From positions 124,001 through 188,000 of IMG/VR virus record IMGVR_UViG_3300043411_000921: a stretch of DNA of 64,000 nt; one strand, written 5' to 3'. Under the pieces are notes generated by a model that was not told the DNA's origin, made no database searches, and saw only the letters and a list, made by a program, of their open reading frames with translations. Below, one piece after another: positions 9,825-55,300 of the stretch (positions are counted from its first letter, which is position 1; each line of letters opens with the position of its first letter). The translations under genes were made by a program, and so were the position numbers.

Positions 9825-9919
9825 TCTATACGCCTTATTACGGGCTTGGAATTGTTTTGATGGGTGAGAGGGTGTTCGGGGAATTTGCTGGCACTGCTGA
9901 GGCGTATAGAACGATTTGG
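9825..9919. repeat. ~95-bp inverted-arm element, copy 1
   Basis: tctatacgcct (9825-9835) / aggcgtataga (9900-9910) + acgattt; related copies at 29600 and 55206. Confidence 0.75.
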
Positions 9920-9926
9920 AAATGGA

Positions 9927-10544
9927 TCAGTTGAAGAACCTGAGTTTTTCTTCTTGACCTTGAACCCAGTGTGTGAGACACCTTGGTTCGTAAGTCTCAG
10001 CACCACCAATCAAAACCTGTTCAGTGCTAGAAGCTGAAAGTTTTCTGAAAGTTCTTGTTGCTGTTACTTCTCCACAGACAGAACAAATACCAACAAGTTT
10101 GAAAACGCTGTTTGCAATGGAAAGAAGTTCTGGCATGATCTTGAATGGTTTACCTTCACTGTCGAGGTCAAGACCAACCGCGATCACATCAATTCCAGAC
10201 AAGAGAACTTCTTCAATCTTTTCTGGGAAGTGAGGACCAAAGAACTGGATCTCATCAACCAGGAGAACGTCAATATTGGTGAGGAGTTCTTGAGATGGGA
10301 AGCTGTCTGTTTGGATTCGGTGAACGAAGTGTCCTGTGTGTTTCTGGAGTGAGACGCCATCGTGCGAAATGACATCTTCATCGCTGAAACGATTGTCGAT
10401 TGATGGTTTGATAACAAGAACTCTGTTTCCGTCTTCAAGACTGTCTTGCAATTCAGCAATGAGTGCTGTTGTTTTTCCAGACATCATTGGTCCAGCGTAG
10501 ATCGTCAAACGCCCAGCTTGTTTTGGTGTTGGTTGTGTTCTCAT
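9927..10544 (-). CDS. tdk: thymidine kinase
   Basis: GPMMSGKTT, KPSIDNRF, VDEIQFF, CSVC, IGGAETYEPRC. Confidence 0.95.
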   Translation of the reverse strand: MRTQPTPKQAGRLTIYAGPMMSGKTTALIAELQDSLEDGNRVLVIKPSIDNRFSDEDVISHDGVSLQKHTGHFVHRIQTDSFPSQELLTNIDVLLVDEIQFFGPHFPEKIEEVLLSGIDVIAVGLDLDSEGKPFKIMPELLSIANSVFKLVGICSVCGEVTATRTFRKLSASSTEQVLIGGAETYEPRCLTHWVQGQEEKLRFFN

Positions 10545-10855
10545 GGTTTGAATTTGTACTCCAGAATCAGGTTTGGTGCTGATTTGTTGAAAGTGATAAT
10601 CCCAACATCTTTGTGTTCGATAACACGAACGAGTGTTCCTCCTGCGTCATATTGACGAATGATCAAGCAGGCAAACCTTGTTTTTGGTTCGGCAAGAAAG
10701 ATGTGATTTGTTTGAATTGGCGCCAAAGGTCTTGTCAGCCACAGAGCAGCGAATGGATGTTCTGGTGATGATGACAAACGTGATTTGGAAGCATCGAACT
10801 CGTAGAGTTCTGGTGTGTTGGGAAGGCTTAGTGTGTAGGTGAAGTGGTTTGACAT
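10541..10855 (-). CDS. hypothetical protein
   Basis: ORF coupled to tdk by an ATGA overlap. Confidence 0.6.
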   Translation of the reverse strand: MSNHFTYTLSLPNTPELYEFDASKSRLSSSPEHPFAALWLTRPLAPIQTNHIFLAEPKTRFACLIIRQYDAGGTLVRVIEHKDVGIITFNKSAPNLILEYKFKP

Positions 10856-10896
10856 GCTGTTTGGAGTGTTCAGAGTTATGCTACAAGATGTTTCGG

Positions 10897-11173
10897 TTAG
10901 AATCTTGTGGTTTTTCCGTTCATTCCAAACTGTCTGGGTTTGCCGAGCATGGCTCTGAGGTTGGGATCGTTGTGGTGAGCACCTTTGGTTGGAATATCGG
11001 CGCCTGCTTCCACAGCTTTTGTGACTTCTTTGTTGATTCTTTCAATCAGCCAGCGGCGATAAGCAACTGGAAAGTTGTAGAAGGTAGGAATGTCCATCCC
11101 GTAGTAATATCCCAAAAGAAACATTGGTTCGAGAAGGACATCAACAATATCATTTGGCGTTAGGCCAAAAAAA
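10897..11173 (-). CDS. tail assembly chaperone C-terminal (T) frame, probably reached by frameshift
   Basis: +1 frame open from the T7 run: FFGLTPNDIVDVLLEPMFLLGYYYGMDIPTFYNFPVAYRRWLIERI. Confidence 0.7.
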
Positions 11174-12052
11174 GGAAGGACCGAGCGTAACGCTCATAAC
11201 CTCCTGATGACCACAGCCATCACATGAAAAGTCTGCTGTCATATCCAGCCCAGGCTCCGCTTCGTCCATCACCCTTCTCAGAGCAGAAGAATCCATCGCA
11301 GGCATGTGCTGACAAAACTTGTTCACAAAACTTCTATCAGAAGAACCATCAACAGAAAGAATTGAGTTCAATAGCTTGGTTGTGACTGGGCTCTCCTGTG
11401 TGAATCCCTTCTTCTTCCTCGCTTCCATATCCTGAAGGATTCTCTCTTCTTCTGCTCCTGTGAGAAACTTGAAAACCACAACCTTCTTTGTCACTGGAAG
11501 TGTGAACTCAAAAGCATTCTGAAAAGGTGCAACCTGCTTCACTTTGTCAAGATCCAGCTCCTTCACTGGAAGGTTTTCAAGATCAATTGTGTGGTCTTGC
11601 TGGAGTTCACAGGATGGGCAGGTGACTTTGCTTGTGTAGGCAGAGCCATAACCAGAAATTCTGATAGCAACCATCAAAGCGTGTTGATCCCCAGAAATCA
11701 AAGAACCAACCTCAATGGATTTGTCCATCAAACAGGACTTGATGAGTTCCTTGATAATGGTTCCTTTGCGGGCAAGAGTTCTATTCATCAGAATATCTTC
11801 TTCTCTTGCGGTCATTGCTTTGATGTCGAGGGTTTCAGAACCTTGCAGTGGTTGGTCTGGATAGACAAGTCCTCTGGATGGGAGAGGAACAACGGCCACG
11901 GGAAGTTCAAACCCGAGGTCTTTCCTTGCTGTTTGTGTTGCATCTTGGATTGCAACACCTTGCAGGGTTGGAAGTCCTCCGGCAGCGGCTTGCTGTGCTG
12001 CAAAAACACTGTTGCGATATGCCCTAAGCTCTTCTTCGTTGGATGTTGACAT
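11150..12052 (-). CDS. tail assembly chaperone / T4 gp26-like hub assembly protein
   Basis: LPSRGLVY, MTAREEDIL, GDQHALMVAIRISGYG, two CxxC, ends FFWP. Confidence 0.85.
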   Translation of the reverse strand: MSTSNEEELRAYRNSVFAAQQAAAGGLPTLQGVAIQDATQTARKDLGFELPVAVVPLPSRGLVYPDQPLQGSETLDIKAMTAREEDILMNRTLARKGTIIKELIKSCLMDKSIEVGSLISGDQHALMVAIRISGYGSAYTSKVTCPSCELQQDHTIDLENLPVKELDLDKVKQVAPFQNAFEFTLPVTKKVVVFKFLTGAEEERILQDMEARKKKGFTQESPVTTKLLNSILSVDGSSDRSFVNKFCQHMPAMDSSALRRVMDEAEPGLDMTADFSCDGCGHQEVMSVTLGPSFFWPNAK

Positions 12053-16404: not shown

Positions 16405-16422
16405 CTCTGAGCAAGAAAGTTC

Positions 16423-16451
16423 TTGACTCTCCTGGATGACTCTGATAGAGT
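16423..16451 (+). promoter_or_regulatory. early sigma70-like promoter
   Basis: TTGACT-N17-(TGa)TAGAGT. Confidence 0.8.
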
Positions 16452-16682: not shown

Positions 16683-16710
16683 CAAAAACGACAGGGACAG
16701 AAAAAAGTTC

Positions 16711-16739
16711 TTGACTCTCTCGACTGGTTCTGGTAAGGT
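16711..16739 (+). promoter_or_regulatory. early sigma70-like promoter
   Basis: TTGACT-N17-(TGg)TAAGGT. Confidence 0.7.
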
Positions 16740-23603: not shown

Positions 23604-23630
23604 CCACGAAATAACCCAGAAGGGTGAATG

Positions 23631-23670
23631 AGAAGAGGGGAGAGGCTAAAAACCTCTCCCCTCTTCTGTT
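23631..23670. terminator. terminator between convergent genes
   Basis: agaagaggggagagg / cctctcccctcttct 15-bp stem. Confidence 0.8.
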
Positions 23671-23707
23671 TGGATAGTGTTAGAACCTTCTGGAAGGTTT
23701 ATCTGTG

Positions 23708-25226: not shown

Positions 25227-25558
25227 TGACATCAACACTCGTATCTCTCTCCTCCCTCCTGTTCAAAGAAGCTATGGCTCTATCGACCGGAGGTGCCTCA
25301 TTAGGGGCCTCAAGCCAAGTCGTTGGGGTTGGACCCGTTGCAAAAAAAGGAACGCTCGCAAAAGCCTCCCAGGCCCCTTCCCGGTCACTTGAAGAAATCA
25401 CTGACGAGGAGTTGCAGGAATCTTTTGGTGCGATGCACGAACCTGATTTTGATGGACCTTCGATGCCTGGACTTTGGGCTGGACTCGAAGATGTCAACGC
25501 TCCAGTGAAAACAGACTCACCAGAGCTTCATCCAAAGCGTTCAAGAAACAAACGATAG
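25226..25558 (+). CDS. putative internal head protein
   Basis: LSSLLFKE|A leader, LQE|S; ATG 5 nt after TAGTTA. Confidence 0.6.
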   Translation: MTSTLVSLSSLLFKEAMALSTGGASLGASSQVVGVGPVAKKGTLAKASQAPSRSLEEITDEELQESFGAMHEPDFDGPSMPGLWAGLEDVNAPVKTDSPELHPKRSRNKR

Positions 25559-28871: not shown

Positions 28872-29570
28872 ATGAAACTCTATCAGTTCCTATTTGAAAA
28901 CTCTGTTCCAGAAGTCGAGTTCGATCGTGCTGGAACAGAGTTTGTCCCGCCCACCAAAACCATCAAAGCCTACAAACTCTTTCGTGTGAATCCAGCAAAA
29001 CCTGGAGAACTCTTTCCTCTGTTCGTCAATGCCAACCAATCCTTGAAAATTGGTGTTTGGTATGAAGCAGAAGAAGGAGAAAAAGTTATTGACTCCAAGA
29101 CAGGAAAACCCGGAGTCAAGTCGAAGTTGGGAAGGTTGGCTTATAGACCAGGATGGCACGCAGGGGATTATCCCTTTTCCACACACATTGGAATTGAACC
29201 AAAACCCAGTGAAATTTCTGGGAGGATGGCACCTTCGGCCAGGGCAGACAATCAAGTGTGGGCAGAAGTAGAAATGCCAGCAGATTTTGATTGGCAAGAA
29301 GTTGCTGATAGCAGAGCGGAAAAGATCAAGTCTGGTCCCAAGAAAGGACAGATTAGATCTGATACTGCTCACATCACCGATCAAATCCCCAAAGGCGGAC
29401 ATTATCGGTACAAAACCAATCCCAACATGACAGGAAACTGGATCATTGGTGGTGCAATGAAAATCATTCGTGTTCTCTCCGATGAAGAAGTTGAGAAGAT
29501 CAACTCCTCTGCCGGATACAAAGACCTTCCCAGAAAATCTCCCTTCGATCTAAAACGTTACGGCTTCTGA
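28872..29570 (+). CDS. conserved-looking globular protein with head-targeting leader
   Basis: MKLYQFLFE|N; AYKLFR, LAYRPGWH, VWAEVE; TACCTA 6 nt upstream. Confidence 0.75.
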   Translation: MKLYQFLFENSVPEVEFDRAGTEFVPPTKTIKAYKLFRVNPAKPGELFPLFVNANQSLKIGVWYEAEEGEKVIDSKTGKPGVKSKLGRLAYRPGWHAGDYPFSTHIGIEPKPSEISGRMAPSARADNQVWAEVEMPADFDWQEVADSRAEKIKSGPKKGQIRSDTAHITDQIPKGGHYRYKTNPNMTGNWIIGGAMKIIRVLSDEEVEKINSSAGYKDLPRKSPFDLKRYGF

Positions 29571-29599
29571 TCTACCATCACCCCTTTTCTTCCGAACAG

Positions 29600-29701
29600 A
29601 ATCGTTCCAGGATGCCCCTTCCGTGTCAGAGAATCATCTGAACGGGTGAGAGTGGCTTGGAACATTTGGGGGCCGCAATAAGGCGTATAGAGCGATTTAG
29701 G
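29600..29701. repeat. ~95-bp inverted-arm element, copy 2
   Basis: aatcgttccaggatgcc ... aggcgtatagagcgatttagg. Confidence 0.75.
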
Positions 29702-29728
29702 AATCTTGGCTGCTGACAACGAATGTTG

Positions 29729-29763: not shown

Positions 29764-31266
29764 ATGTCATACATTCCAGTAAAACTGAAAGTTTTTCATC
29801 CGAAGAAGGTTGTCTCTTACACGGTGGAAGATGCCGACGAGAAGCCACAGCAGATCGACGTGTTTCCAGGGTTCGCCACTGATGCTGTTGAAGGGAACTC
29901 CCACGAGACAGCAAGGAACTGGGCTGCTGGATATCGGTGGCAGCAAAATGAATATGGCGAGACAGAGTTCAACAATGAACCTGTTGAATCCATTCGTGTT
30001 GTTGGGCTGGAACATCGTCGCAACGGTGGGCGTGCTTGGAAGATCGTTGACCGTGGATTTCTCTTTGATCTTCGTGAACAAGCTTTGCTTGATCTAGTGA
30101 TGAATGGTGCTGGAGTATTTTCCCAGGGAATCGTATCTGGTCCTTTTATTTGGATCAGCAACTCTGGAATGCGCCTTGTCCGTGTGGGTTCAACCCAGCA
30201 CTTGGAGGCAACAAAGGGAAAGCCAAAGGATCCAACTCTGTCTCTACTGAGCCAGGGCGATGTTTTCAAACAGAAGCCAGGAAAGTTTTTGGTGTTGATT
30301 ACAGAGCAATCCCGAAAGGAAGAGATGTGGTTGACCTTTAAGGAAGAGCCGACCCAAGAAGACCTTTCCCCAGAAAAGATTGCGGAACTTCTGATTACTG
30401 GGAAAGTGTTTCAGCCGACAAAGCGGCCTGTTCTTCCTGCCAATTCTCTGATTGGGAACTTGAAGGTAGATTTGGAAGAGGTTTACTGTGTCATTACCAG
30501 GAAGGTTTTGAATGAGCCTGTGAAGTGGGTGGGGAACGGGCACAAACTGTTCACTCAACTTTCCAAAAAGACCGAACTGCGTTATTCGGCTGGGGTCGGC
30601 TCTTTTGTCAACAGTGTTTCCACACTGCAAAACGCCATTAGCAGCATTCTTTTTCCAAACAAGAGGGACGAAGGGGTTGATCAAAGGAATTACAAGGTTA
30701 GCCAGTATTACACTGAGATTGAGAGGGCATGTGATTTGATCGGTCATGATTCTTACGGATACGGCACCCATTTCGCAAAATCCAAATCCATCAAGGTAAA
30801 ACCGATTGATTTTGTTTGGATGATTTGGAAGAAAAAAGAGCAATTGGACTCCGCTGGATTTCAGTCATACTCAGGGAATGAATTGGCCGACATGCAGTTT
30901 GATTGCCCCGAATGCGCGAAGACTGCTAAAGAGTTCGTCCTTTATGATCAGGGTCGTGGTCAAAACGGCTGGGAAAAGCGTGGTGTTTTTCTTGAGAAGG
31001 TGTCAAACCATTTTGTTCACTGTGGCAAACAGACGGCAGAGAATAAGATGAAGATTTTTGAGCAGGCATTTCCAGGAGGCGTTGAGCGGTTTCAACTGAA
31101 GCCTCATCACTTTGAGGATATTGTGCCGCCTTATATCAAAGGGCAGTTCACATATAACGATTACGCTCGTCAGGTAAAGGAAATGATGGGAAGCATTTGG
31201 GCTCGGGATCTGGAACCCAAGCTGATTTCATCCTTTGATTACCCAGAACTCAAGAACAAAGAGTGA
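29764..31266 (+). CDS. early hypothetical protein
   Basis: 500-aa ORF directly after an early promoter. Confidence 0.8.
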   Translation: MSYIPVKLKVFHPKKVVSYTVEDADEKPQQIDVFPGFATDAVEGNSHETARNWAAGYRWQQNEYGETEFNNEPVESIRVVGLEHRRNGGRAWKIVDRGFLFDLREQALLDLVMNGAGVFSQGIVSGPFIWISNSGMRLVRVGSTQHLEATKGKPKDPTLSLLSQGDVFKQKPGKFLVLITEQSRKEEMWLTFKEEPTQEDLSPEKIAELLITGKVFQPTKRPVLPANSLIGNLKVDLEEVYCVITRKVLNEPVKWVGNGHKLFTQLSKKTELRYSAGVGSFVNSVSTLQNAISSILFPNKRDEGVDQRNYKVSQYYTEIERACDLIGHDSYGYGTHFAKSKSIKVKPIDFVWMIWKKKEQLDSAGFQSYSGNELADMQFDCPECAKTAKEFVLYDQGRGQNGWEKRGVFLEKVSNHFVHCGKQTAENKMKIFEQAFPGGVERFQLKPHHFEDIVPPYIKGQFTYNDYARQVKEMMGSIWARDLEPKLISSFDYPELKNKE

Positions 31267-41029: not shown

Positions 41030-42093
41030 TATCGGCGTGGGAAGGTGTGACGGCCACGATTGTAGGAATAAGCGGGGAAAACCGGCATGTTGACCATTGA
41101 AGTTTGAATCTCTTCGGTGAAACAAAAGCCAGCAGCTTTGATGCAATCGAGCACAGATGCCTTTTCCGTGGCACGGAACACCCAGGTGCGGGTAGAGTCC
41201 ACATAAGACCGATTGGACGCCTGGATATTCTTCTTGAGGGCTTCCACGAGCTTTGGAGTCTTGCCAGCAACCCAGGGAACGTCCAGGGTGATAACCGTGG
41301 GCCAGCAAACCACCCTTGCACCATCTCGGGCTGCTGCAATAGAGTTTTGCTGAGGATTTACAGCGATCCACTCCTCACACATCTTGATGATGTTGGGAAC
41401 ATCCCCCTCAAAGCACGGCCAATACTCCATCACAACTTCAACAAAAGCCTTGTGAGACTTCGCTGGACAAGTGAAAGTCCGACCGGAGAGCTTGGGAAAA
41501 ACAACTCCGGGAATCTTGCGCATCGCATTCCACCCAGCCTTGTTCTTGCTTCCAGTCAAACTGATAAGGCCATTTTCAAACTTCAGGGTTGCTTCACCCG
41601 TGCTGCTCTTTCCAGCAAGCACGCCAGCAAGGCCAGGATAACCCAGAGACTTGACAACTTGAATCAAGCAAGTCTTGTTTTGGGTGCTGATTCCAACGAA
41701 GGAGAGCATGAAGTCTACGATCTTGACAATGGGACGATAATCCTCACCAGCAAGATAAAACCCACTGTCGCCCTCGTTCTTTTCCTGGAGCTTCTCGTTC
41801 TTCTGCATGAGGAGTTCGAGGGTTGCAGCCCAGATGGGTTGAATGGCGAGGGGAAGTCCGTCAGGAACCACAGACATTCCATAGAGTGTGGCTGCTGAGA
41901 AATTTGCGGGAACAGTGCGAGCAAAAAGCGCGGTGTCCTTCTTCGCGCAGATGGGGCCGATGCCACGCTCCCAGGAAGCGGGATCGGTCAATGCGGCGAA
42001 GCATCGAGAACAATGACGGACATCATTGCAACTCCGAGTGATGCTCGGAAACATGTTGAGGATATCTTGAAAGCTGGTCGTGGCGTTCTTCAT
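41029..42093 (-). CDS. DUF6011-type zinc-finger early protein
   Basis: CSRC..LTDPASWERGIGPIC. Confidence 0.8.
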   Translation of the reverse strand: MKNATTSFQDILNMFPSITRSCNDVRHCSRCFAALTDPASWERGIGPICAKKDTALFARTVPANFSAATLYGMSVVPDGLPLAIQPIWAATLELLMQKNEKLQEKNEGDSGFYLAGEDYRPIVKIVDFMLSFVGISTQNKTCLIQVVKSLGYPGLAGVLAGKSSTGEATLKFENGLISLTGSKNKAGWNAMRKIPGVVFPKLSGRTFTCPAKSHKAFVEVVMEYWPCFEGDVPNIIKMCEEWIAVNPQQNSIAAARDGARVVCWPTVITLDVPWVAGKTPKLVEALKKNIQASNRSYVDSTRTWVFRATEKASVLDCIKAAGFCFTEEIQTSMVNMPVFPAYSYNRGRHTFPRR

Positions 42094-42099
42094 GACCAG

Positions 42100-42128
42100 A
42101 CTCTATCACGGCTTCTCGGGTGGGTCAA
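42100..42128 (-). promoter_or_regulatory. early sigma70-like promoter
   Basis: TTGACC-N17-(TGa)TAGAGT, ATG 6 nt downstream. Confidence 0.82.
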
Positions 42129-42134
42129 GAGCCT

Positions 42135-43322
42135 TTATCTGGCCTGTGCGATTTTTTCTGGGAGGGCTACATTCCAGAGATTTGCCTTGGCTGTCCTTGA
42201 CTTGGTAAACCCCAAAGACTCCAACTTCTTTGCCATTAGCTGAGGCTTATAGTTCGAAACATGAACCAAGCATTTCTCTTCCTTCAAAAACAACATCCTC
42301 GCTTGGATAATCTCCTGAAGGGAAGACTTGGGCTCTTTATCTGTCCAGGGTCGAAGGGAAGAAAAAAACTCCCGGTCCCCATCCTTCAAAGCTCGAACCT
42401 CTTCCAACCCAATCTTCAAATTAGGCTTGTTCTTCTTCAACCAAGAGAAGTAAATCTCATTGACCTTCTCAAAAGATGTATTGAATGCCGGATACTTCGT
42501 TACCGAGTCAATAACTTGTGTAGCTTCATCAAAAAATTCACAATAGTTTTCAAAATGTTTTAGGTAAGCGGAGCAAAGTTTTTCTAGTTGAGCACGTTCT
42601 GCCCCTTTGGCTCTGTCAGAGGAAAGAAGTCTGTGGAGAACAATGTTTCTAACGCCAACTGGGACGGGTTCGGTTTTCATTTTTTCTCTGACATGCTCGA
42701 TTGTTCCAGTTGACCAGTCAGACAGAGAGGACTTAGCCGCCATCTTTGATTTGGTCGTTGTTGTTTTTTGTGTCTTGGTTGATTTCCTTGATTTTAGTGC
42801 GTTGAGGAATTTTTCTGGTAGGTCTTGAATTTCATTCGGACAGACTTCGCCATAAGTGCCACGAGTATGTTTGCTTGGTGGAATAACAACATAACCGTCT
42901 TGGCCTCGTGTATCTACCTTGTCCGCCAAATGGGATGCAGTGTTTTTTGTCGGGGTCGATGTCCAAAACCAAAAATGCCACCCACCAGATCCAGTCCGAT
43001 AGTGAAAAGTCGAAGAAAGTTCCTTTATGATTGGGTGATCTGCCGCATCAACATCAACAACAATAAGATATTTCCCAGTTTTTTCAGATTTTCGTCCTGT
43101 TGCGAGGCCAAAGTTCATTTTGTGACTGAGAGAAAACCACTCTTCAACCTTTTCTGGTTTATTGCTGGCAATGATTTTCCAATTGTAACGAAAGAGTGGG
43201 TGTTTTCCAGGAGAAGCGCAGTTTTGTTCGCCACACGAACAAGTGTTGTTAAGCCGAATCGAATAAAGTGGAAGTATGTGAAATTTGTTTTCCAGAATGA
43301 TTTGTTTAATTGATGATGGCAT
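42135..43322 (-). CDS. bifunctional DNA primase/polymerase (Prim-Pol)
   Basis: CSCG..C.SPGKHP, NFGLATG, VVDVD, TGSGGWH, DTRGQDGYVVIPPS, GVRN. Confidence 0.9.
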   Translation of the reverse strand: MPSSIKQIILENKFHILPLYSIRLNNTCSCGEQNCASPGKHPLFRYNWKIIASNKPEKVEEWFSLSHKMNFGLATGRKSEKTGKYLIVVDVDAADHPIIKELSSTFHYRTGSGGWHFWFWTSTPTKNTASHLADKVDTRGQDGYVVIPPSKHTRGTYGEVCPNEIQDLPEKFLNALKSRKSTKTQKTTTTKSKMAAKSSLSDWSTGTIEHVREKMKTEPVPVGVRNIVLHRLLSSDRAKGAERAQLEKLCSAYLKHFENYCEFFDEATQVIDSVTKYPAFNTSFEKVNEIYFSWLKKNKPNLKIGLEEVRALKDGDREFFSSLRPWTDKEPKSSLQEIIQARMLFLKEEKCLVHVSNYKPQLMAKKLESLGFTKSRTAKANLWNVALPEKIAQAR

Positions 43323-44708: not shown

Positions 44709-47111
44709 TCACCCAAAAAACACGGCTGAAAATAGCGCATAGTCGGAAATGCCTCCTCCGCTCTTGTTGACCCTCAATTCCAAAACTCTTGAAGAACCAG
44801 TGGCAACAAAAGAAGCTGTTTTGTGCGTTGGGGTTGTCTCAGTCCATGACAAAGAAGAAAGAGATGATGAGTTAACAAGATCATACAATTCCACACTTCC
44901 AGTGACTCCGGCTACGGAAGCAAAACCAATGCCTTCGAGTGTGTAGGATGGAGAATTTAGATCTGTAAAAAGAGCGTAACCCGCGATGGTGCTTGCAGAA
45001 AGGGTTGTTGTGACAACCCCAGCCAGAATTGGGATTTTACTTGAGGCAGAGAGTTCCCACTGACCAATTGTGTTGTAGTTTGCTGTAATGCCGGAACTTC
45101 CTGTCAAGAAAGGATTTCCGTTTGTAGTAGTGTTCAAAGAACCCGTTATGCCACCAAAGACTTCAAATGAACCTGTTACTTGAACGGAGCCGGAAGCAAC
45201 TCTAAAAACATCGTGCCGATTAAAACTACTATCCCCGTCCCCGACAACAAAAAGAGAGGAAGCATCTTGAATGTTGAATTTTCCGAATGCGGCTTGTGTC
45301 GTTGTGGGGTCAAGATTCCCAGCGGTTTCTCCTTCTGCGATTGTTCCAAGCCCCGCAGCGAAGCTTCCACTGCCATTCGCAATCGTTTGCCAACCTGTGG
45401 TGTGGGAGGCTGGGCCGTTCGTTAAAGTGTAGTAGCCTTCGGCGTGGGAATAGCTGCCGTTGGTTGATGAACCAACCCCTTCTGCGTGGGAATGCTCTGC
45501 GCCAGTGGTTGTTCCATTTCCCTCAGCGTGAGAAAAATTACCATTTGCTGTTGAAAAAAAGCCTTCAGCGTGCCCACCGAGAGCGTTAGATTTTGCGAAA
45601 TAACCTTCTGCGTGTGCAGCGTATGCTGCTGCTGTTGTAAACACACCTTCCGCATGGGAAAAGAACCCAGATGCTTGTGTGCTTGAACCTTCGGCGTGAG
45701 TGGCTTGGCTTGATGCAATAGTGTCTTGGCCTTCGGCGTGAGAGTTGTCACCGGATGCAATGTTTCTTATTCCCTGGGTTACGCTTCCAGTGATTTCGGC
45801 CCCCAAAGAGGCACTTAGTTTTGCAATTTCGATAGAGCTGGTCGTGTAAATGATTGTGCTGTTTATTTCAGACCAGAGGCTTGTTCCACCAGAAGAGCCA
45901 GAAATTTCCCACTGGCCGTTTGTGTTGTAGACTGTTGTGATACCCGGCCCACCAATCAAAAACGGACTACCATCGACGGTACCACTCAAAGAACCAGTGA
46001 TTTTTGAAGAGATGAACGACCCAGTTACTTCAACCGAGGTGTCATTAACTCTGAAAATATCAGATCTGAGAAAATCATCATCATCTGTTCCGTTTCCAAC
46101 AACGAACAATGAGAAATCGTTGTTGCGAAGATTATACTTTCCAACTACATTTTGTCCAGAGCCAGATGCGATTGTTCGGATACCGGAAGCGTGTGAAAAG
46201 TCGCCTGGGGTGTCGGTGTAGGAACCTTCGGCATGTGACCAGTTTCCAATAGCGTTTGTCTCAAATCCTTCAGCGTGCGATCCCACCCCAAACGCTTCTG
46301 CGCCTTCCCCTTCTGCGTGGTTATAATCGGCATGTGCTCTTGTCATTCTCCCTTCTGCGTGGGAATAATCGCCAGAAGCAATTGTCATTGTGCCTTCTGC
46401 ATGGGAACCAAGACCTGAAGAAGTCGCCATTCTCCCTTCTGCGTGGGAATTGATTCCACTGGCGAGTGTACCATCTCCCTCCGAGTGACCACCAGCACCT
46501 GATGCCGTTGTTGCAAAACCTTCTGCGTGCGAATGATTTCCAGAAGCAGTAGAATTGTACCCTTCCGAATGAGAATAGTCGCCCGAAGCGACTCCATATT
46601 GGCCTTCCGAGTGACTACACAAACCCGAAGCCACTGTTTCTTCTCCTGATGCGACAGAAGATCCGGTGGCATAGCTGCCAATTCCAGCGATCACACTAGA
46701 TCCTGTGACAACGAGACTGATTTCCCCAACAAATTCATTTCGGATTTGAACAGATCCAGTGGAGTAGGTACTACCTGAGATGTCTGAGAACCAGATTTGG
46801 GCACTGCCCCCACTTGCGCCAGAACCATCAACAGACAGGTTCCCAGAGACGTGTAGATCCCCTCCAAAAACCGCAATAGTAGGCGTGCTACCTCCCTTGC
46901 CCCCAACCGATCCAGAGACGTAGAAAAAGGCGTCAGAGCCGATTGGCGAGGTGTCAAAAATAGCAGGGTTGATATTCCCCTGGTTGGCTGGAGTTCCTTG
47001 AGCACTCAAAGGATAAACAAGAAGGCATTCGGCGGAACCCGCATTGGCTCCGCTGACAATCAGCTTGTTTACTTGAATTTGATCGGAACGAAAATCTGGT
47101 GAGTTTGGCAT
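44709..47111 (-). CDS. tail fibre / adhesin with YadA-head-like 14-aa SHAEG repeats
   Basis: Two blocks of (S/G)HAEG..T.A.G repeats and many VTGS motifs; TAGTTA upstream. Confidence 0.85.
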   Translation of the reverse strand: MPNSPDFRSDQIQVNKLIVSGANAGSAECLLVYPLSAQGTPANQGNINPAIFDTSPIGSDAFFYVSGSVGGKGGSTPTIAVFGGDLHVSGNLSVDGSGASGGSAQIWFSDISGSTYSTGSVQIRNEFVGEISLVVTGSSVIAGIGSYATGSSVASGEETVASGLCSHSEGQYGVASGDYSHSEGYNSTASGNHSHAEGFATTASGAGGHSEGDGTLASGINSHAEGRMATSSGLGSHAEGTMTIASGDYSHAEGRMTRAHADYNHAEGEGAEAFGVGSHAEGFETNAIGNWSHAEGSYTDTPGDFSHASGIRTIASGSGQNVVGKYNLRNNDFSLFVVGNGTDDDDFLRSDIFRVNDTSVEVTGSFISSKITGSLSGTVDGSPFLIGGPGITTVYNTNGQWEISGSSGGTSLWSEINSTIIYTTSSIEIAKLSASLGAEITGSVTQGIRNIASGDNSHAEGQDTIASSQATHAEGSSTQASGFFSHAEGVFTTAAAYAAHAEGYFAKSNALGGHAEGFFSTANGNFSHAEGNGTTTGAEHSHAEGVGSSTNGSYSHAEGYYTLTNGPASHTTGWQTIANGSGSFAAGLGTIAEGETAGNLDPTTTQAAFGKFNIQDASSLFVVGDGDSSFNRHDVFRVASGSVQVTGSFEVFGGITGSLNTTTNGNPFLTGSSGITANYNTIGQWELSASSKIPILAGVVTTTLSASTIAGYALFTDLNSPSYTLEGIGFASVAGVTGSVELYDLVNSSSLSSLSWTETTPTHKTASFVATGSSRVLELRVNKSGGGISDYALFSAVFFG

Positions 47112-47153
47112 AGTTTGTGTGGGTAACTATGCCAAAACAAGGCCAGAAAGGTT

Positions 47154-48020
47154 TTAGAGGATTTCGGAGGAGATCGTTGCGAGCGACCAGCCTTTCGTGG
47201 ATTTGCGGCGCCCTTTTAGAACCGCGCACAATTTTGTTGGCGCAAGACCGTACAAACGACAAAAAGCTGCCAAGCATTGAATTTCTGTTATCACAACCCC
47301 ATCGGGGCCGATCAGTTGTAATCCCAAATAGGTTTTTGAATTATGATGTTCTGTTCCCATCTTCTTACCCAAATGGGCCAAACGATTTTTTTGCTTGGAT
47401 TCTTCGGTGTGATGTTTGTTGAAATTAGGATGCTTCGAACCTTTCAACACATTTTTTGGACCAAGCTTTTTCTTTTCCGTGCCAACCAAAGTCCACCCTT
47501 TTGTGCTGGGGGCTTGTCGATTTAGCAACTTCCACAAACACTTCGGATTCAAATGGTGTTCTTCTGCAAAACTTGTAACGGAATCGACACTTGTATACAG
47601 AATTAAATCCGGTGAGAGTAGTTGAATATTGCTGTATTGTTTTCCCACCTTCTTGGATCCGTGCGGGGAAGAAGCATCTTTTCTGAGATTGTAACACTTG
47701 TTCTTACCAAAAGAAGAATCAATGTAGCGTTGTTCTACCAACAAACGATCTTCCTTGGTACCACCAACGACTTCCAGAACCTCAAACACGAATACCTCTT
47801 CCCCGCATTTGTCAAAATCGGCTTGCAGATAACGGTTAGAATGCTTCCCTCTTCTTAGGGAAGCGGTGTGCTGATTCCAGCGGACCTTGAAGCATTTTGC
47901 CGAACCAACATAGACTCTTTCGTTGAGTTTGTTTCTGAGTCTATACACACCGCCTTCATTCGATTTCCCTCCGAACTTGTATTCCACAGGACGTAACCTT
48001 TCATGGAATACATAGTTCAA
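47154..48020 (-). mobile_element. free-standing GIY-YIG homing endonuclease
   Basis: GVY..YVGS..R, NUMOD3-like HTEESKQK, two SPD/GPD..KGW repeats. Confidence 0.9.
47156..47184. repeat. 29-bp direct repeat (copy of the phoH 3' end)
   Basis: 28/29 identical to 48043-48071. Confidence 0.9.
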
Positions 48021-48040
48021 AAACCCCTGTTTTCCAGGCT

Positions 48041-49432
48041 TCAGAGGATTTCGGAGGAGATTGTTGCGAGCAAACTCCTTTCCCCGCGCAAAAATGTCAC
48101 ATGTCCGGCAATATCTTGATCTTTGAAGCGTTCAATAACAATTGAGAGACCATTGGAAACTGAGTCAACGTAGGTGTTGTCGATCTGCTCCAAGTCTCCA
48201 GTCAAAACAATCTTGGTGTTTTCTCCAACACGAGTCAATATTGTTTTCATTTCGTGCAGGTTCGTGTTTTGAGCTTCGTCAATAATCACGAAAGCGTTGG
48301 CGATGGAACGTCCACGAATGAAGGTCATTGCTTGAACTTCAATGATTCCTTCGTCGAAGTAACTCTGAAGAACTTGCTCGTCATGTCGTGGTTGTTTTTT
48401 CTTTCCACCTTCTTGCATTGAATTGCCGATGAGAAAGCGAAGGTTGTCTTTGATTGGAGCAAGCCACGGTTCCAGTTTTTCATTCAAATCTCCTGGAAGG
48501 AACCCAACGTCTTTTCCGAGGGGCATGATTGGACGGCAGATGAGCAGACTTCTGTACCGTTTTGTGTTCAAGACTTGTTCAAGTCCAGCGTTGATTGCGC
48601 TAAGTGTTTTTCCCACACCGGCTTTTCCAGCAAGAGTGACAAGTTTCACGGCTGGGTCAAAGAGAAGGTCGGCAGCAAATTCTTGTTCTTTGTTTCTTGG
48701 TTGAAGTTTTCCAGGAGAAGGGGTCAATTGTCGCAATGGTTTGTTTTTGGACACGAACCTTGCAACTGCGGACTGTTGTCCGTCTTTGATAACAACAAAC
48801 TGGTTAGGATGAAGGTCTTGTTGGAGGTCTTCGGGAAGTGTGTAATCATTTTTGTTGTCATGGAAGTCATCAACCACAGTTTCATCGCGGCTGGAAACAT
48901 CAATCGTTTTTACGCCCGAGTAAAGACTGTTCACGCTTGTTGCGACATTGAACTTACGGTAATCCTCACAGGGAATTCCGAGGGCCTGAGCTTTCAATCG
49001 AAGGATTGTATCTCTTGTGACAAGGAATGCGGTTTCACCAGCAGCTTTTGCCATATCCAAGTAGTTTTGACAGAAGTGAACAATGGTGTTGTCACCGCTC
49101 TTCTTTGTCTCCAATTCAGATGGCAAACCGATTGCTGTTTTCTCATCGGCACACAAATCGGAGAGTGCAAGGATACGGAGGGTTCCCAACTTCTTTCCGA
49201 GTGGAATTCCAGCTTTGAAATCTTTGTGGACCTTGGTCAAGTCAGCAAGTTTTCTGACAACTTCTCTGGCGTTTCTGCCGACTTCATCTTGACGGTCTTT
49301 GTGTCTGTCAAGTTCCTCCAGCACAATGAGAGGAATCACCAAGTCATGCTCTTCGAAACCAAACAGGCTGTTGCTGTCAGTCAACAGAACGTTTGTGTCA
49401 AGAATGTAAGTCTTGCGGGCTTTTTTTGTCAT
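48041..49432 (-). CDS. phoH: PIN-PhoH (PhoH2) protein
   Basis: ILDTNVLL, EELD, GKAGVGKT, GFLPG, IRGRS, IDEAQN, GDLEQID. Confidence 0.95.
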   Translation of the reverse strand: MTKKARKTYILDTNVLLTDSNSLFGFEEHDLVIPLIVLEELDRHKDRQDEVGRNAREVVRKLADLTKVHKDFKAGIPLGKKLGTLRILALSDLCADEKTAIGLPSELETKKSGDNTIVHFCQNYLDMAKAAGETAFLVTRDTILRLKAQALGIPCEDYRKFNVATSVNSLYSGVKTIDVSSRDETVVDDFHDNKNDYTLPEDLQQDLHPNQFVVIKDGQQSAVARFVSKNKPLRQLTPSPGKLQPRNKEQEFAADLLFDPAVKLVTLAGKAGVGKTLSAINAGLEQVLNTKRYRSLLICRPIMPLGKDVGFLPGDLNEKLEPWLAPIKDNLRFLIGNSMQEGGKKKQPRHDEQVLQSYFDEGIIEVQAMTFIRGRSIANAFVIIDEAQNTNLHEMKTILTRVGENTKIVLTGDLEQIDNTYVDSVSNGLSIVIERFKDQDIAGHVTFLRGERSLLATISSEIL

Positions 49433-53199: not shown

Positions 53200-53796
53200 A
53201 TGAAAACCAGTACATCAACAGTTGGAGCAGTTTGGAAAGACGCAGACGGTAAGACCTTAACCGACGAAGGACTTTATCAATGGGTGAAGTCTTCTGTCCT
53301 GGGCATGGACTCTGAATATGAATTGATTGTGGGTGTTGACTCACATCGTCACAAGAAATTCTTTCAGTTTATCACGGTTGTTTGCATTTATCGCAAGGGT
53401 CGTGGAGGTTACTACTTTTACAAGAGATCAGCACGTCCTGCGTCTGATTACAAGGGAACGTATCCAGTAAGAGTTAGAACCCGCATGTTTTACGAGGCTT
53501 CCTTGGCTCTTGAAACAGCGCAGAACATTTTTGATCACACTGAGGCTTTGCCTGTCATTCACCTTGACGCATCTCCTCCAGGTGGAACAGAAGTGACTTC
53601 TGCTTTCTCTGATCAGTTGAATGGTTACATTGTTGGTTCAGGTTTTGAGTGTGTTTTGAAGCCTTGGGCGTTTGTCGCAAGTGGAATTGCTGACAAACAT
53701 AGCAAGTCTTCGTGCTGGGTTATTCCAAACACTTTGGACATCGGAAACCCAAGAGACAAAGGTAAAAACACGATTGCTAAGGAAATTCAAAAATGA
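53200..53796 (+). CDS. RNase H-like YkuK (DUF458) protein
   Basis: IVGVDS, GRGG, EASLALE, IHLD, KPWAFVASGIAD. Confidence 0.85.
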   Translation: MKTSTSTVGAVWKDADGKTLTDEGLYQWVKSSVLGMDSEYELIVGVDSHRHKKFFQFITVVCIYRKGRGGYYFYKRSARPASDYKGTYPVRVRTRMFYEASLALETAQNIFDHTEALPVIHLDASPPGGTEVTSAFSDQLNGYIVGSGFECVLKPWAFVASGIADKHSKSSCWVIPNTLDIGNPRDKGKNTIAKEIQK

Positions 53797-54125
53797 GCAA
53801 AGATGAACGCAGAGTAAAGCTTGATACCGCCATCGAAAGAAACATTCACCAACTGGTCAAAAACATCTCCGAAGGAATGTTTGACGCCGTTCAACTGAGT
53901 TGTCGGAAGAACAACATTCCTGTCGAACCAGAAGTGCTAACGCATATTTTGAAGACAGCCCAGATTGTCATTTCTGGGCTGGAGCTTCAGAACCTCGATG
54001 CTTTTCACAGAAGCATCAAGACATTGCTGGATGATTATGCTGGAGAGGATGGGGAAGGCTCGCTTGCAAAACTTTCCGAGGCAACCGTTCTCCCAAAATC
54101 CCGTGGCAATCAAAAATCAGCTTGA
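53793..54125 (+). CDS. hypothetical protein
   Basis: ATGA-coupled helical ORF. Confidence 0.7.
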   Translation: MSKDERRVKLDTAIERNIHQLVKNISEGMFDAVQLSCRKNNIPVEPEVLTHILKTAQIVISGLELQNLDAFHRSIKTLLDDYAGEDGEGSLAKLSEATVLPKSRGNQKSA

Positions 54126-54192
54126 GCCTTCAAAAGCTTGAAAAGATTCCCTTCCTCTTGGCATTTCTTGCCATAGTTCTCTTTAGAAACGC

Positions 54193-54678
54193 ATGACAAC
54201 TTCATCCTCTCCACTGGTCGAAGGTGTGAAACACCTCGTCACCTGTACCTGCACACTTCCACAGTTTGAATCGCTGGATCCGCCAGTCTTCCACAAATTC
54301 ATTGTGTTCTCGTTAATCAATGCAGACGGAAGCATTCAACCAAGCATTGCAAGATGTAACAACTGTGAAGGGTTGCATCGAGTAACAGAAGTTGGACTTT
54401 CTCAAAAACTCAAGAAAGAAACCTCTGCCGTTCTTCCCGATGTGGAGGAAATAAAAACAGGATTGCCTGAAAAACTCGTTCAACTCGTTGAACGCTACAA
54501 ACTTGACCTGCCTTCCTGGCAAGAGATTCAGTTTGTTTTTGAGAATGAGAAATGGGGCAGACCAATCATTCTCACCAAAGAACAAGGAGACAATCCAGAT
54601 GATGTCTCTGGAAAATACCTCCTGATCTCCAGCAAATCTCTCTGGAGAATTCAAACCTTCTCAACGGAAAACCTATGA
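54193..54678 (+). CDS. hypothetical zinc-binding protein
   Basis: CTC..H..CNNC..H. Confidence 0.7.
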   Translation: MTTSSSPLVEGVKHLVTCTCTLPQFESLDPPVFHKFIVFSLINADGSIQPSIARCNNCEGLHRVTEVGLSQKLKKETSAVLPDVEEIKTGLPEKLVQLVERYKLDLPSWQEIQFVFENEKWGRPIILTKEQGDNPDDVSGKYLLISSKSLWRIQTFSTENL

Positions 54679-55025
54679 CAACAGACAACAACAACATCCC
54701 AGAAACAGAAAAAGCCTCATTTCTTACAGACGAATCAGAAAAAGAGGAAGGTGTCTCTTACGTCGTTCCAAACTACATTGAAACCAAACTCACAAAAGCG
54801 AGCAAACAAAAGTGCCGTGGCATTGTGAGAACCATCAATGATTTCGGAATCTCTCAGAGAGAGAAACTATTCCTCATCTATCTCTTGAGTTTGGAACTTG
54901 AACACCGAGATTCGATGTTGAAAATTTCCAAAACAATTGGAGAATGTCAAGCTTCGATTGAAGCACCCAAGGTTATTGTCTCTGAGGACCAGCCACAGCA
55001 GAAAAAACAAATCCTGCTTGGTTGA
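54675..55025 (+). CDS. hypothetical protein
   Basis: ATGA-coupled. Confidence 0.7.
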   Translation: MTTDNNNIPETEKASFLTDESEKEEGVSYVVPNYIETKLTKASKQKCRGIVRTINDFGISQREKLFLIYLLSLELEHRDSMLKISKTIGECQASIEAPKVIVSEDQPQQKKQILLG

Positions 55026-55205
55026 CACCAATCTTCTCTGCCACTTGTAAATCAATTCTCGTTATCACTTTCCCGTTCTCTTCAATGGTAACAAACCTAG
55101 TCGTTACCTTCTCTGGAAGAATCCCAGTTCCCCTCGAAACATAACAAACCTCAGTAGATGTTTGGATCATCAGAATGGCACCTATAACCTTCGCCCAAAC
55201 AGGGC

Positions 55206-55300
55206 CTATACGCCTTATCTGTGACAGCAAATCATTTCGATGGCTCGGAGGACGTTGGAGAAATTTGGAGCCCGTATAAGGCATCCTGGAGCGATTTAGG
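55206..55300. repeat. ~95-bp inverted-arm element, copy 3
   Basis: ctatacgcctta ... taaggcatcctggagcgatttagg. Confidence 0.75.

What the first reader, a model, noticed from the sequence alone, without database searches (positions are those of the whole stretch)
9825..55300. Three copies of a ~95-bp inverted-arm non-coding element with swapped arm types
Seen at 9825-9919, 29600-29701 and 55206-55300. There are two arm types, A (AGGCGTATAGA[AG]CGATTT) and B (AGGCATCCTGGA[AG]CGATTT). They are arranged as inverted pairs A'/A, B'/A and A'/B at nearly constant spacing, with partly shared spacers (gtgtcagagaatcat vs gtgacagcaaatcat; gggtgagag in two copies; attt-g before the right arm). All three lie just downstream of late-type genes, about 20-25 kb apart. 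Mismatched arms in two copies argue for DNA-level protein sites rather than RNA hairpins. Inference: recombination/resolution, origin, or genome-organising sites.
Basis: seen in the sequence. Interest (0 to 1): 0.66.

Follow-up and report, generated by a model that had tools for sequence, protein, structure and literature searches.

The report
Oriented two-module intergenic repeats, T4-like phage
The three sites are real members of a family of about 18 conserved, roughly 105-base boundary elements in an uncultivated T4-like giant phage; selection keeps their sequence rather than a hairpin, they sit between the end of one gene and the start or end of the next, and their job is unknown.

Summary
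Observation confirmed and extended. They belong to a family of at least 17-18 well-supported copies in the 241-kb record, a 66%-complete T4-like myovirus, and the family recurs at orthologous places in related contigs.

Each element is two diverged, inverted copies of a ~50-bp module (L and R) around an asymmetric G-rich core. No RNA or DNA hairpin is conserved: RNAalifold finds no pairs, arms of one copy pair no better than arms of different copies, folding energies are near shuffled controls, and Rfam gives nothing.

Orthologous copies are 85-100% identical where third codon positions are about 50% diverged. So the sequence is under selection.

Elements lie after stop codons: 5 of 22 convergent junctions, 7 of 211 tandem, about 0 of 23 divergent. 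In tandem settings 11 of 13 point the way the genes do, and the R tail (GGAG plus 6 nt) can run straight into the next start codon. Arms have been shuffled among copies (PHI p=0.0005). Some indels and divergence steps coincide with elements.

No recombinase or transposase was found. The neighbours are not late genes.

Best reading (moderate confidence): protein-read DNA punctuation cassettes at gene boundaries, analogous to PeSL cassettes but lacking their promoter and stem-loop.

The parts
9810..9925 (+). Element copy s1. L module from about 9810, core GGGTGAGAGGGTG near 9867-9879, and an atypical R module with a TATAC-type box ending ...GAACGATTT at 9917. It fills the whole 117-nt gap between two converging genes.
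   Evidence: Sequence. R1 67 bits, E 5e-20. Arm motifs. RNA fold z -1.18.
29596..29704 (-). Element copy s2, nearly two-sided: both ends carry ...CGATT tails. It scores best on the minus strand (54.5 bits) and 33.6 bits on the plus strand. It lies between two plus-strand genes and is one of 2 exceptions among the 13 tandem settings, 11 of which are co-oriented with their genes.
   Evidence: RNA fold z -0.88. Context.
55191..55305 (+). Element copy s3, close to the typical L/R type: left box CTATAC, right arm GGCATCCTGGAGCGATTT. The stop codon of the converging 273-aa gene (55296-55298) lies inside the R tail.
   Evidence: 74.7 bits, E 2e-22. Only one difference in the element against a 95.6%-identical relative. 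RNA fold z +0.60.
25295..25370 (+). Weak, partial element-like match between two minus-strand genes. Possibly a decayed copy; not counted in the robust set.
   Evidence: R1 16.3 bits, E 3.4e-4. nhmmer first pass E 0.06.
9621..9809 (+). 62-aa ORF whose TGA stop (9807-9809) abuts the L module of s1.
   Evidence: No PHROG family.
9927..10544 (-). Thymidine kinase gene converging on s1. Its stop codon is 2-4 nt from the R end.
   Evidence: Pfam PF00265, E 5.5e-38. Positions.
28872..29570 (+). 232-aa gene of unknown function ending 26 nt before s2.
   Evidence: phrog_30118, E 4e-58..
29764..31266 (+). 500-aa gene of unknown function starting 60 nt after s2.
   Evidence: No Pfam or PHROG family.
54675..55025 (+). 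116-aa gene upstream of s3. It is shown to be coding by third-position substitutions against a relative.
   Evidence: 14 of the 15 differences in this gene are at third codon positions.
55026..55190 (.). 165-nt stretch between that gene and s3, with no convincing ORF and no difference from a 95.6%-identical relative. Nature unknown; it may belong to the same boundary region.
55296..56117 (-). 273-aa gene converging on s3. Real by third-position substitution pattern. The overlapping 86-aa plus-strand ORF that starts right after the R arm is not supported.
   Evidence: Weak amidase-like PHROG hit.

Best explanation
The three sites belong to a clade-restricted family of oriented intergenic elements of about 105 bp in an uncultivated T4-like giant myovirus.

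Anatomy. Each element is two diverged, inverted copies of a ~50-bp module. The L module is typically ACGGCAC, then a box (YTATAC or CCAGAA), then GCCTTAT. The R module, read inward, is AAATCGCTC, then CAGGA, then KGCTTTT. The two flank a 10-13 bp asymmetric G-rich core that can lie in either direction.

Proposed function. The elements are kept by selection as sequence, not as a hairpin. I propose they are read as double-stranded DNA by a protein not yet identified, from phage or host, and serve as punctuation at gene and transcription-unit boundaries. L begins at or a few bases after the stop codon of the upstream gene. R ends in one of three things: a GGAG-plus-6-nt ribosome-binding region and the next start codon, a sigma-70-like promoter, or the stop codon of a converging gene.

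Side effect. The shared arms give short patches of homology. At these patches arms are swapped between copies, and small gene cassettes are gained or lost between related phages. That is how PeSL cassettes behave in other T4-type phages.

Shown here: family membership, anatomy, absence of conserved pairing, selective constraint, position and polarity, and arm shuffling.

Inferred only: protein binding, the boundary function, and any causal role in recombination.
For: Family and specificity:
- nhmmer and the R1 model.
- No false hits in 427 kb of unrelated viral loci.
- Copies in relatives G001 and G002, in two further IMG/VR contigs and in metagenome contigs.

Two-module anatomy: left halves and reverse-complemented right halves align as one unit.

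No hairpin.

Selection:
- Orthologous elements are 88-100% identical against flanks of 80-98%.
- Third codon positions between G000 and G002 are about 50% diverged.
- At c204242 the element aligns at 85% while the intergenic DNA beside it no longer aligns.

Position:
- 5 of 22 convergent, 7 of 211 tandem and about 0 of 23 divergent junctions.
- The L start lies 0-17 nt from the upstream stop codon in 7 copies.
- A co-oriented ORF starts within -9 to +15 nt of the R end in 7 copies.
- c19084 reads GGAA+CGATCT+ATG and c21420 reads GGAG+CGATTT+GTG.
- Sigma-70-like TTGACA/TTGACC-N17-TAAGGT/TAAGTT motifs directly follow c27678 and c59777.

Polarity: 11 of 13 tandem settings are co-oriented with the genes, p=0.022.

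Terminator swap: in c251 and c6222 a canonical GC hairpin with a T run stands where L should be.

Shuffling and exchange:
- PHI test on 28 half-units, p=0.0005.
- A 1.36-kb two-gene cassette in G002 is bounded by a repeated R arm.
- G001 lacks the core, R arm and a small ORF at c19084.
- The step in divergence across elements is larger than across other gene boundaries: median 0.0725 against 0.0225, p=0.006.
Against: - No binding protein is identified.
- 50-bp half-sites are very large for a simple operator.
- Information content shows no helical periodicity.
- Positions that are not family-conserved are also conserved between orthologues. A plain consensus-binding model does not predict that.
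- Polarity with transcription and the GGAG-start arrangement fit an RNA-level role as well.
- The recombination link is modest. There are 39 sharp mosaic breakpoints in 77 kb of G000/G001 alignment and only 1-2 fall at elements.
- The coincidence of indels with elements is no greater than expected if indels are simply intergenic.
- The record is 66% complete, so absence of genes proves little.
Confidence: 0.35

Rival explanations
1. RNA-level intercistronic or 3'-UTR element. It would be transcribed with the upstream gene and act as a linear or weakly structured signal for attenuation, processing or mRNA stability. Its R tail would form the translation-initiation region of the next gene.
For: - L starts at the stop codon, and elements are enriched at convergent junctions.
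- 11 of 13 tandem copies are co-oriented with the genes.
- A canonical terminator hairpin replaces L in c251 and c6222.
- GGAG plus 6 nt plus a start codon at c19084 and c21420.
- A few copies fold well: c237299 z -4.8, c21420 z -2.9.
Against: - No consensus structure for the whole element or for the modules on either strand.
- No excess complementarity within a copy.
- The three window copies fold like shuffled sequence.
- On one RNA strand L and R are complements, not the same motif. Their family-level likeness is therefore unexplained unless they pair, and they do not.
- Genes that start immediately after R (c19084, c21420) need read-through, so the element cannot be an efficient terminator.
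- Canonical hairpin terminators are used elsewhere in the genome.
- No RegB homologue.
Confidence: 0.25
2. A true PeSL-type regulatory cassette. L would be the terminator or attenuator and R a promoter of a class that is not sigma-70-like, for example one read with a phage-encoded factor.
For: - The genome is T4-like (Gp23; gp13, sheath and gp19 in relatives).
- The layout from stop codon to Shine-Dalgarno and start matches the published PeSL layout (PMC2839356).
- Some copies lie near indels.
- Many R modules carry TATAAAGC- or TAAAAAGC-like words that recall the T4 late box TATAAATA (the T4 box is from my own knowledge).
Against: - No -35/-10 pair and no terminator-like hairpin inside s1-s3.
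- The TATAAA-like word is not conserved across copies.
- In five convergent settings such a promoter would fire antisense into a gene's 3' end.
- The phage has separate sigma-70-like TTCTTGAC promoters, two of which lie right after elements.
- No MotA.
Confidence: 0.15
3. [quoted passage not shown] The arms would be decayed terminal inverted repeats, the copies sit where insertions are tolerated, and they have no present function.
For: - Size of about 100 bp, inverted arms with conserved outer ends, many dispersed copies and a preference for 3' intergenic DNA.
- Chimeric arms.
Against: - Strong purifying selection along the whole length.
- All copies in alignable regions are present at orthologous sites in relatives of 80-98% identity. 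None shows whole-element presence/absence.
- I saw no target-site duplication in the flanks.
- No transposase in the record.
- Polarity with transcription.
Confidence: 0.12
4. Sites for site-specific recombination or resolution, or replication origins.
For: - Inverted arms around an asymmetric core resemble recombinase core sites.
- The swapped arm pattern B'/A followed by A'/B is what a crossover between an A'/A site and a B'/B site would leave.
- One element-like sequence lies inside a gene under synonymous constraint. Some phage origins are embedded in genes in this way (from my own knowledge, e.g. lambda ori in gene O).
Against: - No tyrosine or serine recombinase and no Y1 transposase.
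- About 18 or more copies is far more than any resolution system uses.
- Arm types are mixed at a finer scale than one central crossover explains.
- Indel junctions show no fixed crossover point.
- There are no AT-rich unwinding regions or iterons; the elements are 52% GC against 45.7% for the genome.
Confidence: 0.08

Closest known systems
PeSL (promoter-early stem-loop) cassettes of T4-type phages (Arbiol et al. 2010, PMC2839356; Comeau et al. 2014, PMC4122927)
   Same: - Dispersed, conserved intergenic cassettes in T4-like genomes.
- They run from the stop codon of one gene to the Shine-Dalgarno and start codon of the next and are oriented with the genes.
- They lie near indels and replacements between close relatives.
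- A cassette bounded by two direct copies, as in G002, is the arrangement from which PeSL mini-circles arise.
   Different: - PeSLs are defined by a sigma-70-like promoter plus a stable stem-loop. These elements have neither.
- These are about 105 bp and built of two inverted modules.
- They also sit between converging genes.
- This phage has separate TTCTTGAC-type promoters.
Start-associated sequences and extended SAS of Cluster K mycobacteriophages (Pope et al. 2011, PMC3203893)
   Same: - A repeated motif that includes the ribosome-binding region just upstream of start codons.
- It is preceded by an imperfect inverted repeat with a variable spacer.
- It is oriented with the genes and conserved across related phages at the same genes.
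- Its function is unknown.
   Different: - SAS is 13 bp and its inverted repeats are 17 bp with a 4-13 bp spacer. Here the modules are about 50 bp.
- SAS is always start-linked. About a third of these elements face a converging stop codon instead.
- There is no sequence likeness.
17-bp dyad repeats of Cluster O mycobacteriophages (Cresawn et al. 2015, PMC4351075)
   Same: - More than 30 dispersed copies.
- Dyad symmetry, taken by the authors as sites for a dimeric DNA-binding protein.
- Mostly intergenic, with some inside genes.
- Not tied to promoters. Function unknown.
   Different: - They are short and nearly invariant, whereas these are long and 57% alike on average.
- The authors saw little link to insertions.
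Bacterial MITE / REP-BIME / ERIC-type intergenic repeats
   Same: Imperfect palindromic dispersed repeats of about 100 bp, found mostly downstream of genes and between converging genes. Some are known to bind proteins such as IHF or gyrase (from my own knowledge).
   Different: - Those elements form hairpins or have clear terminal repeats with target duplications, and they vary in presence between strains.
- These show no conserved pairing, no presence/absence variation and no transposase.
- They are in a phage, not a bacterial chromosome. One scan of 185,579 species genomes with a two-arm pattern gave only a chance match.

Membership tests
PeSL cassette (T4-type phages) | Lies in a T4-like genome and spans the intergenic space from the upstream stop codon to the downstream Shine-Dalgarno and start codon | tested here: met
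   Gp23 in the record. Distances from stop to L and from R to start. c19084 and c21420 read base by base. This holds for tandem settings only; five copies face converging genes.
PeSL cassette (T4-type phages) | Contains a sigma-70-like -35/-10 early promoter | tested here: not met
   No promoter-like pair inside s1, s2 or s3. The genome's enriched TCTTGAC / ATAGTTA promoter words are not part of the element.
PeSL cassette (T4-type phages) | Contains a stable stem-loop acting as terminator or attenuator | tested here: not met
   No consensus pairs. z-scores of s1-s3 are -1.2, -0.9 and +0.6. No terminator-like pattern. Only the variant copies c251 and c6222 carry a GC hairpin in place of L.
PeSL cassette (T4-type phages) | Sits at indels and replacements between close relatives; forms mini-circles | tested here: inconclusive
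   Cassette bounded by a repeated R arm in G002. Deletion starting inside c19084 in G001. Larger divergence step across elements, p=0.006. But only 1-2 of 39 sharp breakpoints fall at elements. Circles could not be tested because no reads were available.
MITE / REP-like mobile repeat | Terminal inverted repeats | tested here: met
   Left halves and reverse-complemented right halves align as one unit with conserved outer ends. This holds at family level only: within-copy identity of the two halves is 43%.
MITE / REP-like mobile repeat | Presence/absence of whole copies between related genomes, target-site duplications, and a cognate transposase | tested here: not met
   All copies in alignable regions are present in G001/G002. 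No Y1 transposase, integrase or resolvase (the record is 66% complete). No flank duplication seen when reading.
Rickettsia-palindromic-element-like in-frame insertion | The element adds an extra in-frame segment that homologous proteins lack | tested here: not met
   For the two in-gene matches tested, the encoded stretch aligns with homologues of equal length (A2; A3).
Intrinsic (rho-independent) terminator | GC-rich hairpin followed by a U tract | tested here: not met
   Canonical examples exist elsewhere in the genome, e.g. window 23604-23707.
Known structured RNA family (Rfam 15) | Match to a covariance model | tested here: not met
   No match at gathering score in the window, and none at E<=1 on 15 copies.
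Site-specific recombination site (att / res / attC-like) | A cognate recombinase gene, and a fixed crossover point in a conserved core | tested here: not met
   No PF00589 or PF00239 in the record. The core is variable and lies in either direction. Indel junctions lie at different places. For attC, the defining folded strand is absent.
SAS/ESAS-like start-associated repeat | A conserved motif including the ribosome-binding region a few bases before start codons, with an inverted repeat upstream | tested here: inconclusive
   True for 7 of 23 copies, where an ORF starts within 15 nt of the R end. Two of these were verified. It is false for copies that face converging genes.

The most novel reading that the evidence does not exclude
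A new class of cis-element: a bipartite, polar 'boundary word' of about 105 bp that a phage protein reads as duplex DNA. It marks the limits of gene cassettes throughout a giant T4-like genome and can even be written into an essential tail gene under synonymous constraint. Its exchangeable arm boxes (TATAC / CAGGA / CAGAA) would set which boundaries pair or recombine. In effect it would be a built-in address system for cassette exchange, without a dedicated recombinase.
Probability: 0.15. Interest if true: 0.75.

Novelty: new variant of a known kind. Interest (0 to 1): 0.5.

Why it matters
Dispersed, conserved non-coding repeats are among the least understood features of large phage genomes. 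Examples are PeSL cassettes, SAS/ESAS and the Cluster O repeats.

This family is unusually long, polar and strongly constrained, and yet it has none of the usual readable signals: no hairpin, no promoter and no terminator. If a protein reads it, finding that protein would reveal how an uncultivated lineage of T4-like giant phages punctuates expression or organises its DNA. If the arms guide exchange, it would extend the PeSL idea of mobile regulatory cassettes to a structurally different element.

Practically, the elements mark gene boundaries and likely assembly break points in metagenomic contigs of this clade.

Tried and rejected
- **Long RNA or DNA hairpin.** Rejected: no consensus pairs, no within-copy excess of complementarity, z-scores near zero for the window copies.
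- **Known RNA family or tRNA.** None.
- **Small protein gene.** No frame is open in all copies, and an orthologue pair differs by a stop codon.
- **In-frame palindromic insertions in genes (RPE-like).** Rejected by protein alignments. Several iterated-HMM hits inside genes (c46687 in a QueC-like gene, c15815, c107046, c143768, c215502) are treated as doubtful or false.
- **Helical (10.5-bp) periodicity of conserved blocks.** None, permutation p 0.7.
- **HIP1 palindromes.** Zero in the genome.
- **Promoter classes.** Sigma-54, Bacteroidetes-type, MotA-box and T4 late-promoter readings of the R module were examined by eye. None is conserved across copies. No MotA or RegB gene.
- **Host-derived repeat.** A two-arm pattern scan of the species genome collection gave one chance hit in a coding region.
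- **Indel boundaries enriched at elements.** 5 of about 26 events or contig ends lie within 100 nt of an element. That is about what is expected if indels are confined to intergenic DNA, so it is not claimed.
- **Sharp mosaic breakpoints.** Abundant everywhere; only 1-2 of 39 fall at elements.
- **Public phage records.** No nucleotide or protein match. A flanking gene found no relatives in viral contigs.

Full report
**The observation.** Arm A (AGGCGTATAGARCGATTT) occurs at window 9900 and 29681, and arm B (AGGCATCCTGGARCGATTT) at 55279. The inverse of B is at 29599 with two mismatches. The inverse of the A core is at 9826 and 55206. A sequence-only covariance model built from 16 copies scores the three at 67, 54.5 and 74.7 bits (E 5e-20, 4e-16, 2e-22). 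The next window hit has 16 bits. The same model finds nothing at E<=0.001 in 427 kb of unrelated viral loci, so the likeness is not chance.

**The genome.** The window is bases 124001-188000 of a single 241,399-bp virus record with 45.7% G+C. CheckV rates the record 66% complete. It encodes a T4-type major capsid protein (Gp23). More distant relatives show the T4 order gp23, gp13, sheath, gp19, with HNH and GIY-YIG genes in between. Public phage records hold no match by DNA or protein. This is an uncultivated T4-like giant myovirus.

The genes beside the three sites are a 62-aa ORF and thymidine kinase (site 1), two unknown genes (site 2), and a 116-aa and a 273-aa unknown gene (site 3). Elsewhere the neighbours are small unknown ORFs and nucleic-acid enzymes such as RNA ligase, a RuvC-like resolvase and an exonuclease. 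'Late-type genes' is not supported.

**Extent of the family.** An nhmmer profile from ten copies finds 14 loci at E<1e-8 and 18 at E<=1.3e-5 in the record. Iteration reaches 24, but the extra ones are doubtful (and below).

Two IMG/VR contigs carry the family at about one copy per 8-10 kb:
- G001, 82.5 kb, 90-98% identical to bases 6.4-93 kb of the record.
- G002, 87 kb, 80-85% identical to bases 189-241 kb.

Two further IMG/VR contigs from the same two samples also carry it. So do several metagenome contigs, one of them a more distant relative. Relatives whose tail protein is only 67% identical show no copy in 42 kb. A scan of bacterial and archaeal species genomes gave only a chance hit. The family is restricted to one clade.

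**Anatomy.** Left halves and reverse-complemented right halves align with one another as a single unit of about 50 nt. The two positions nevertheless differ systematically:
- The left (L) module is mostly ACGGCAC, then YTATAC or CCAGAA, then GCCTTAT, then ctGTGCC.
- The right (R) module, read inward, is mostly AAATCGCTC, then CAGGA, then KGCTTTT.

Left-left and right-right identities (52% and 59%) exceed left-right identity (47%). The 10-13 nt core (GGGTGAGAG-like) is asymmetric and occurs in either direction relative to the arms. A PHI test on 28 half-units is significant (observed 2.05, permuted 2.23 +/- 0.05, p=0.0005). Pieces of arms have therefore been exchanged among copies, in both orientations.

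**Not a hairpin.**
- RNAalifold finds no consensus pair for the whole element or for the module on either strand.
- Left/right complementarity within a copy is 43%, not higher than between different copies at 47% +/- 9. There is no selection for a copy's arms to match each other.
- Folding z-scores against dinucleotide shuffles average about -1.35 over 14 copies and the folds are heterogeneous. The three window copies give -1.18, -0.88 and +0.60.
- Rfam gives nothing even at E<=1.
- No reading frame is open in all copies.

**Selection.** Every copy that lies in a region alignable with G001 or G002 is present at the orthologous place. Element identity exceeds flank identity in nearly all pairs: 96 against 90%, 98 against 95%, 88 against 80%, 95 against 80%. 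Third codon positions between the record and G002 are about half diverged. At c204242 the element aligns at 85% while the intergenic DNA next to it does not align at all. Positions that are not conserved across the family are also conserved between orthologues.

**Position and polarity.** With crude gene calls, elements occupy 5 of 22 convergent junctions, 7 of 211 tandem junctions and at most 1 of 23 divergent ones. In tandem settings 11 of 13 copies have L towards the upstream gene, counting five copies unique to G002 (p=0.022).

L begins 0-17 nt after the upstream stop codon in seven copies. A co-oriented ORF starts within -9 to +15 nt of the R end in seven copies. At c19084 the R tail reads GGAA, CGATCT, ATG. 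At c21420 it reads GGAG, CGATTT, GTG, and that ORF joins an overlapping gene chain. After c27678 and c59777 a sigma-70-like TTGACA/TTGACC-N17-TAAGGT/TAAGTT follows R. This matches the TCTTGAC word that is enriched upstream of genes.

Between converging genes, the stop codon of the second gene lies in or beside the R tail. At site 3 that stop is at 55296-55298, and the gene is validated by third-position substitutions. In c251 and c6222 a canonical GC hairpin with a T run replaces L. Ordinary hairpin terminators also stand at other convergent junctions, e.g. window 23604-23707. The scans find no sigma-70 promoter pattern and no terminator pattern inside the three window elements.

**Matches inside genes.** Several weaker matches fall in ORFs. 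Two were tested with protein searches. The stretch encoded by c215502 and the stretch encoded by c200429 both align with homologues of the same length, so neither is an insertion. c46687 lies in a QueC-like gene that matches its family profile end to end, and it shows no extra conservation. I treat most in-gene matches as false.

c200429 is the exception and remains unexplained. It resembles both arms and the core. It lies antisense in a conserved tail gene. Divergence at synonymous sites falls from about 11 to 3 per 60 nt exactly over it (binomial P 2.5e-6).

**Recombination.** In G002 a 1.36-kb cassette of two minus-strand genes follows the c204242 orthologue. It is bounded on the far side by a second copy of the R arm plus part of a module. 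In G001 the core, the R arm and a 99-aa ORF at c19084 are missing, and the junction lies inside the element. At c70630 homology with G001 breaks within the R arm.

The change in divergence from one side of an element to the other is larger than across other gene boundaries (median 0.0725 against 0.0225, Mann-Whitney p=0.006). Three elements sit at a switch from about 0% to about 8-10% divergence. Against this, sharp mosaic breakpoints are common (39 in 77 kb) and only one or two lie at elements. The indel coincidence is no more than expected if indels are simply intergenic.

Three of six contig ends lie within 250 nt of an element (P about 0.004). No tyrosine or serine recombinase, Y1 transposase, MotA or RegB is found in the partial record.

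**Most likely mechanism.** Inverted, related modules that are kept by selection without pairing are what a protein reading duplex DNA would maintain. Polarity, the stop-to-start layout and the hairpin-for-L substitution place the element at the limits of genes and transcription units. I therefore favour a protein-read boundary or punctuation cassette, with exchange at the shared arms as a by-product (confidence about 0.35).

The rivals are:
- An RNA-level intercistronic signal (0.25).
- A true terminator-promoter cassette with an unrecognised promoter class (0.15).
- Inert MITE-like relics (0.12).
- Site-specific recombination sites or origins (0.08).

Protein binding and the boundary function are inferred, not shown.

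**Comparison with known systems.** The closest analogue is the PeSL cassette of T4-type phages: same kind of genome, same stop-to-start layout, same association with plastic loci (PMC2839356, PMC4122927). Its two defining parts, a sigma-70-like promoter and a stem-loop, were tested here and are absent, so this is not a PeSL.

The SAS/ESAS repeats of Cluster K mycobacteriophages share the link to start codons and an upstream imperfect inverted repeat (PMC3203893). The 17-bp dyad repeats of Cluster O share the idea of dispersed protein sites of unknown role (PMC4351075). Neither resembles these elements in size or sequence. MITE, REP and RPE membership fails on mobility, hairpin and insertion tests.

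I class the family as a new variant of a known kind, namely dispersed conserved intergenic cassettes of phage genomes.

**Limits.**
- Gene calls were made with a simple codon-score script.
- The record is incomplete.
- Only two relatives give long alignments.
- No expression or read data could be used.

Noticed in passing
genome 200429-200545 (outside the window; locus L022, gene in L004:436-1635 minus strand): An element-like sequence lies antisense inside a conserved ~400-aa tail gene. It is not an insertion, yet synonymous divergence drops sharply exactly over it. It is absent from the same gene in relatives that are 67% identical at protein level.
   Followed up: partly
contig ends: record base 1 (250 nt from copy c251); end of G001 (50 nt from c6222); start of G002 (33 nt from c189192): Three of six contig ends lie next to elements (P about 0.004). 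This could reflect strain-level variation that breaks assemblies, or physical DNA ends or nicks.
   Followed up: no
window 55026-55190: A 165-nt stretch without a convincing ORF, just upstream of site 3. It shows no difference from a relative that differs at 15 positions in the preceding 350-nt gene.
   Followed up: no
window 23604-23707: A perfect 15-bp GC-rich hairpin lies between the converging ribonucleotide reductase and GP88-like genes, flanked by CCAGAAGG / CCTTCTGG words that recall the element's CCAGAA arm box. It is a classic two-way terminator.
   Followed up: partly
window 16413-16447, 16701-16735 and 42089-42135 (reverse strand): Repeated AAAGTTCTTGACTC... motifs. TCTTGAC and ATAGTTA are the most enriched words upstream of genes genome-wide. 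These are probably the phage's sigma-70-type early promoters.
   Followed up: partly
window 45436-46617, inside the 800-aa ORF 44709-47111 (minus strand): At least 12 copies of a 42-nt (14-aa) repeat within a G+C-rich gene. This suggests a repetitive fibre- or beta-helix-like protein. No Pfam family was found.
   Followed up: no
L028:1610-2859 (G002, between the c204242 orthologue and a solo R arm): A two-gene cassette absent from this record: a 187-aa protein and a 186-aa pentapeptide-repeat-like protein, both on the minus strand.
   Followed up: partly
window 47149-47184 and 48036-48071: A 36-nt repeat, 92% identical, at the 3' ends of two adjacent minus-strand genes (47154-48020 and 48041-49432). 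The two genes are probably paralogues with a shared C-terminus.
   Followed up: no
window 62829-62907 and 63148-63226: A 79-nt repeat, 71% identical, in neighbouring small plus-strand ORFs. It is a tandem pair of paralogous small genes.
   Followed up: no
genome 46561-47715 (L001:562-1716 minus strand): A QueC-like gene (phrog_1741, E 9e-66). It hints that the phage modifies its DNA with a 7-deazaguanine derivative.
   Followed up: no
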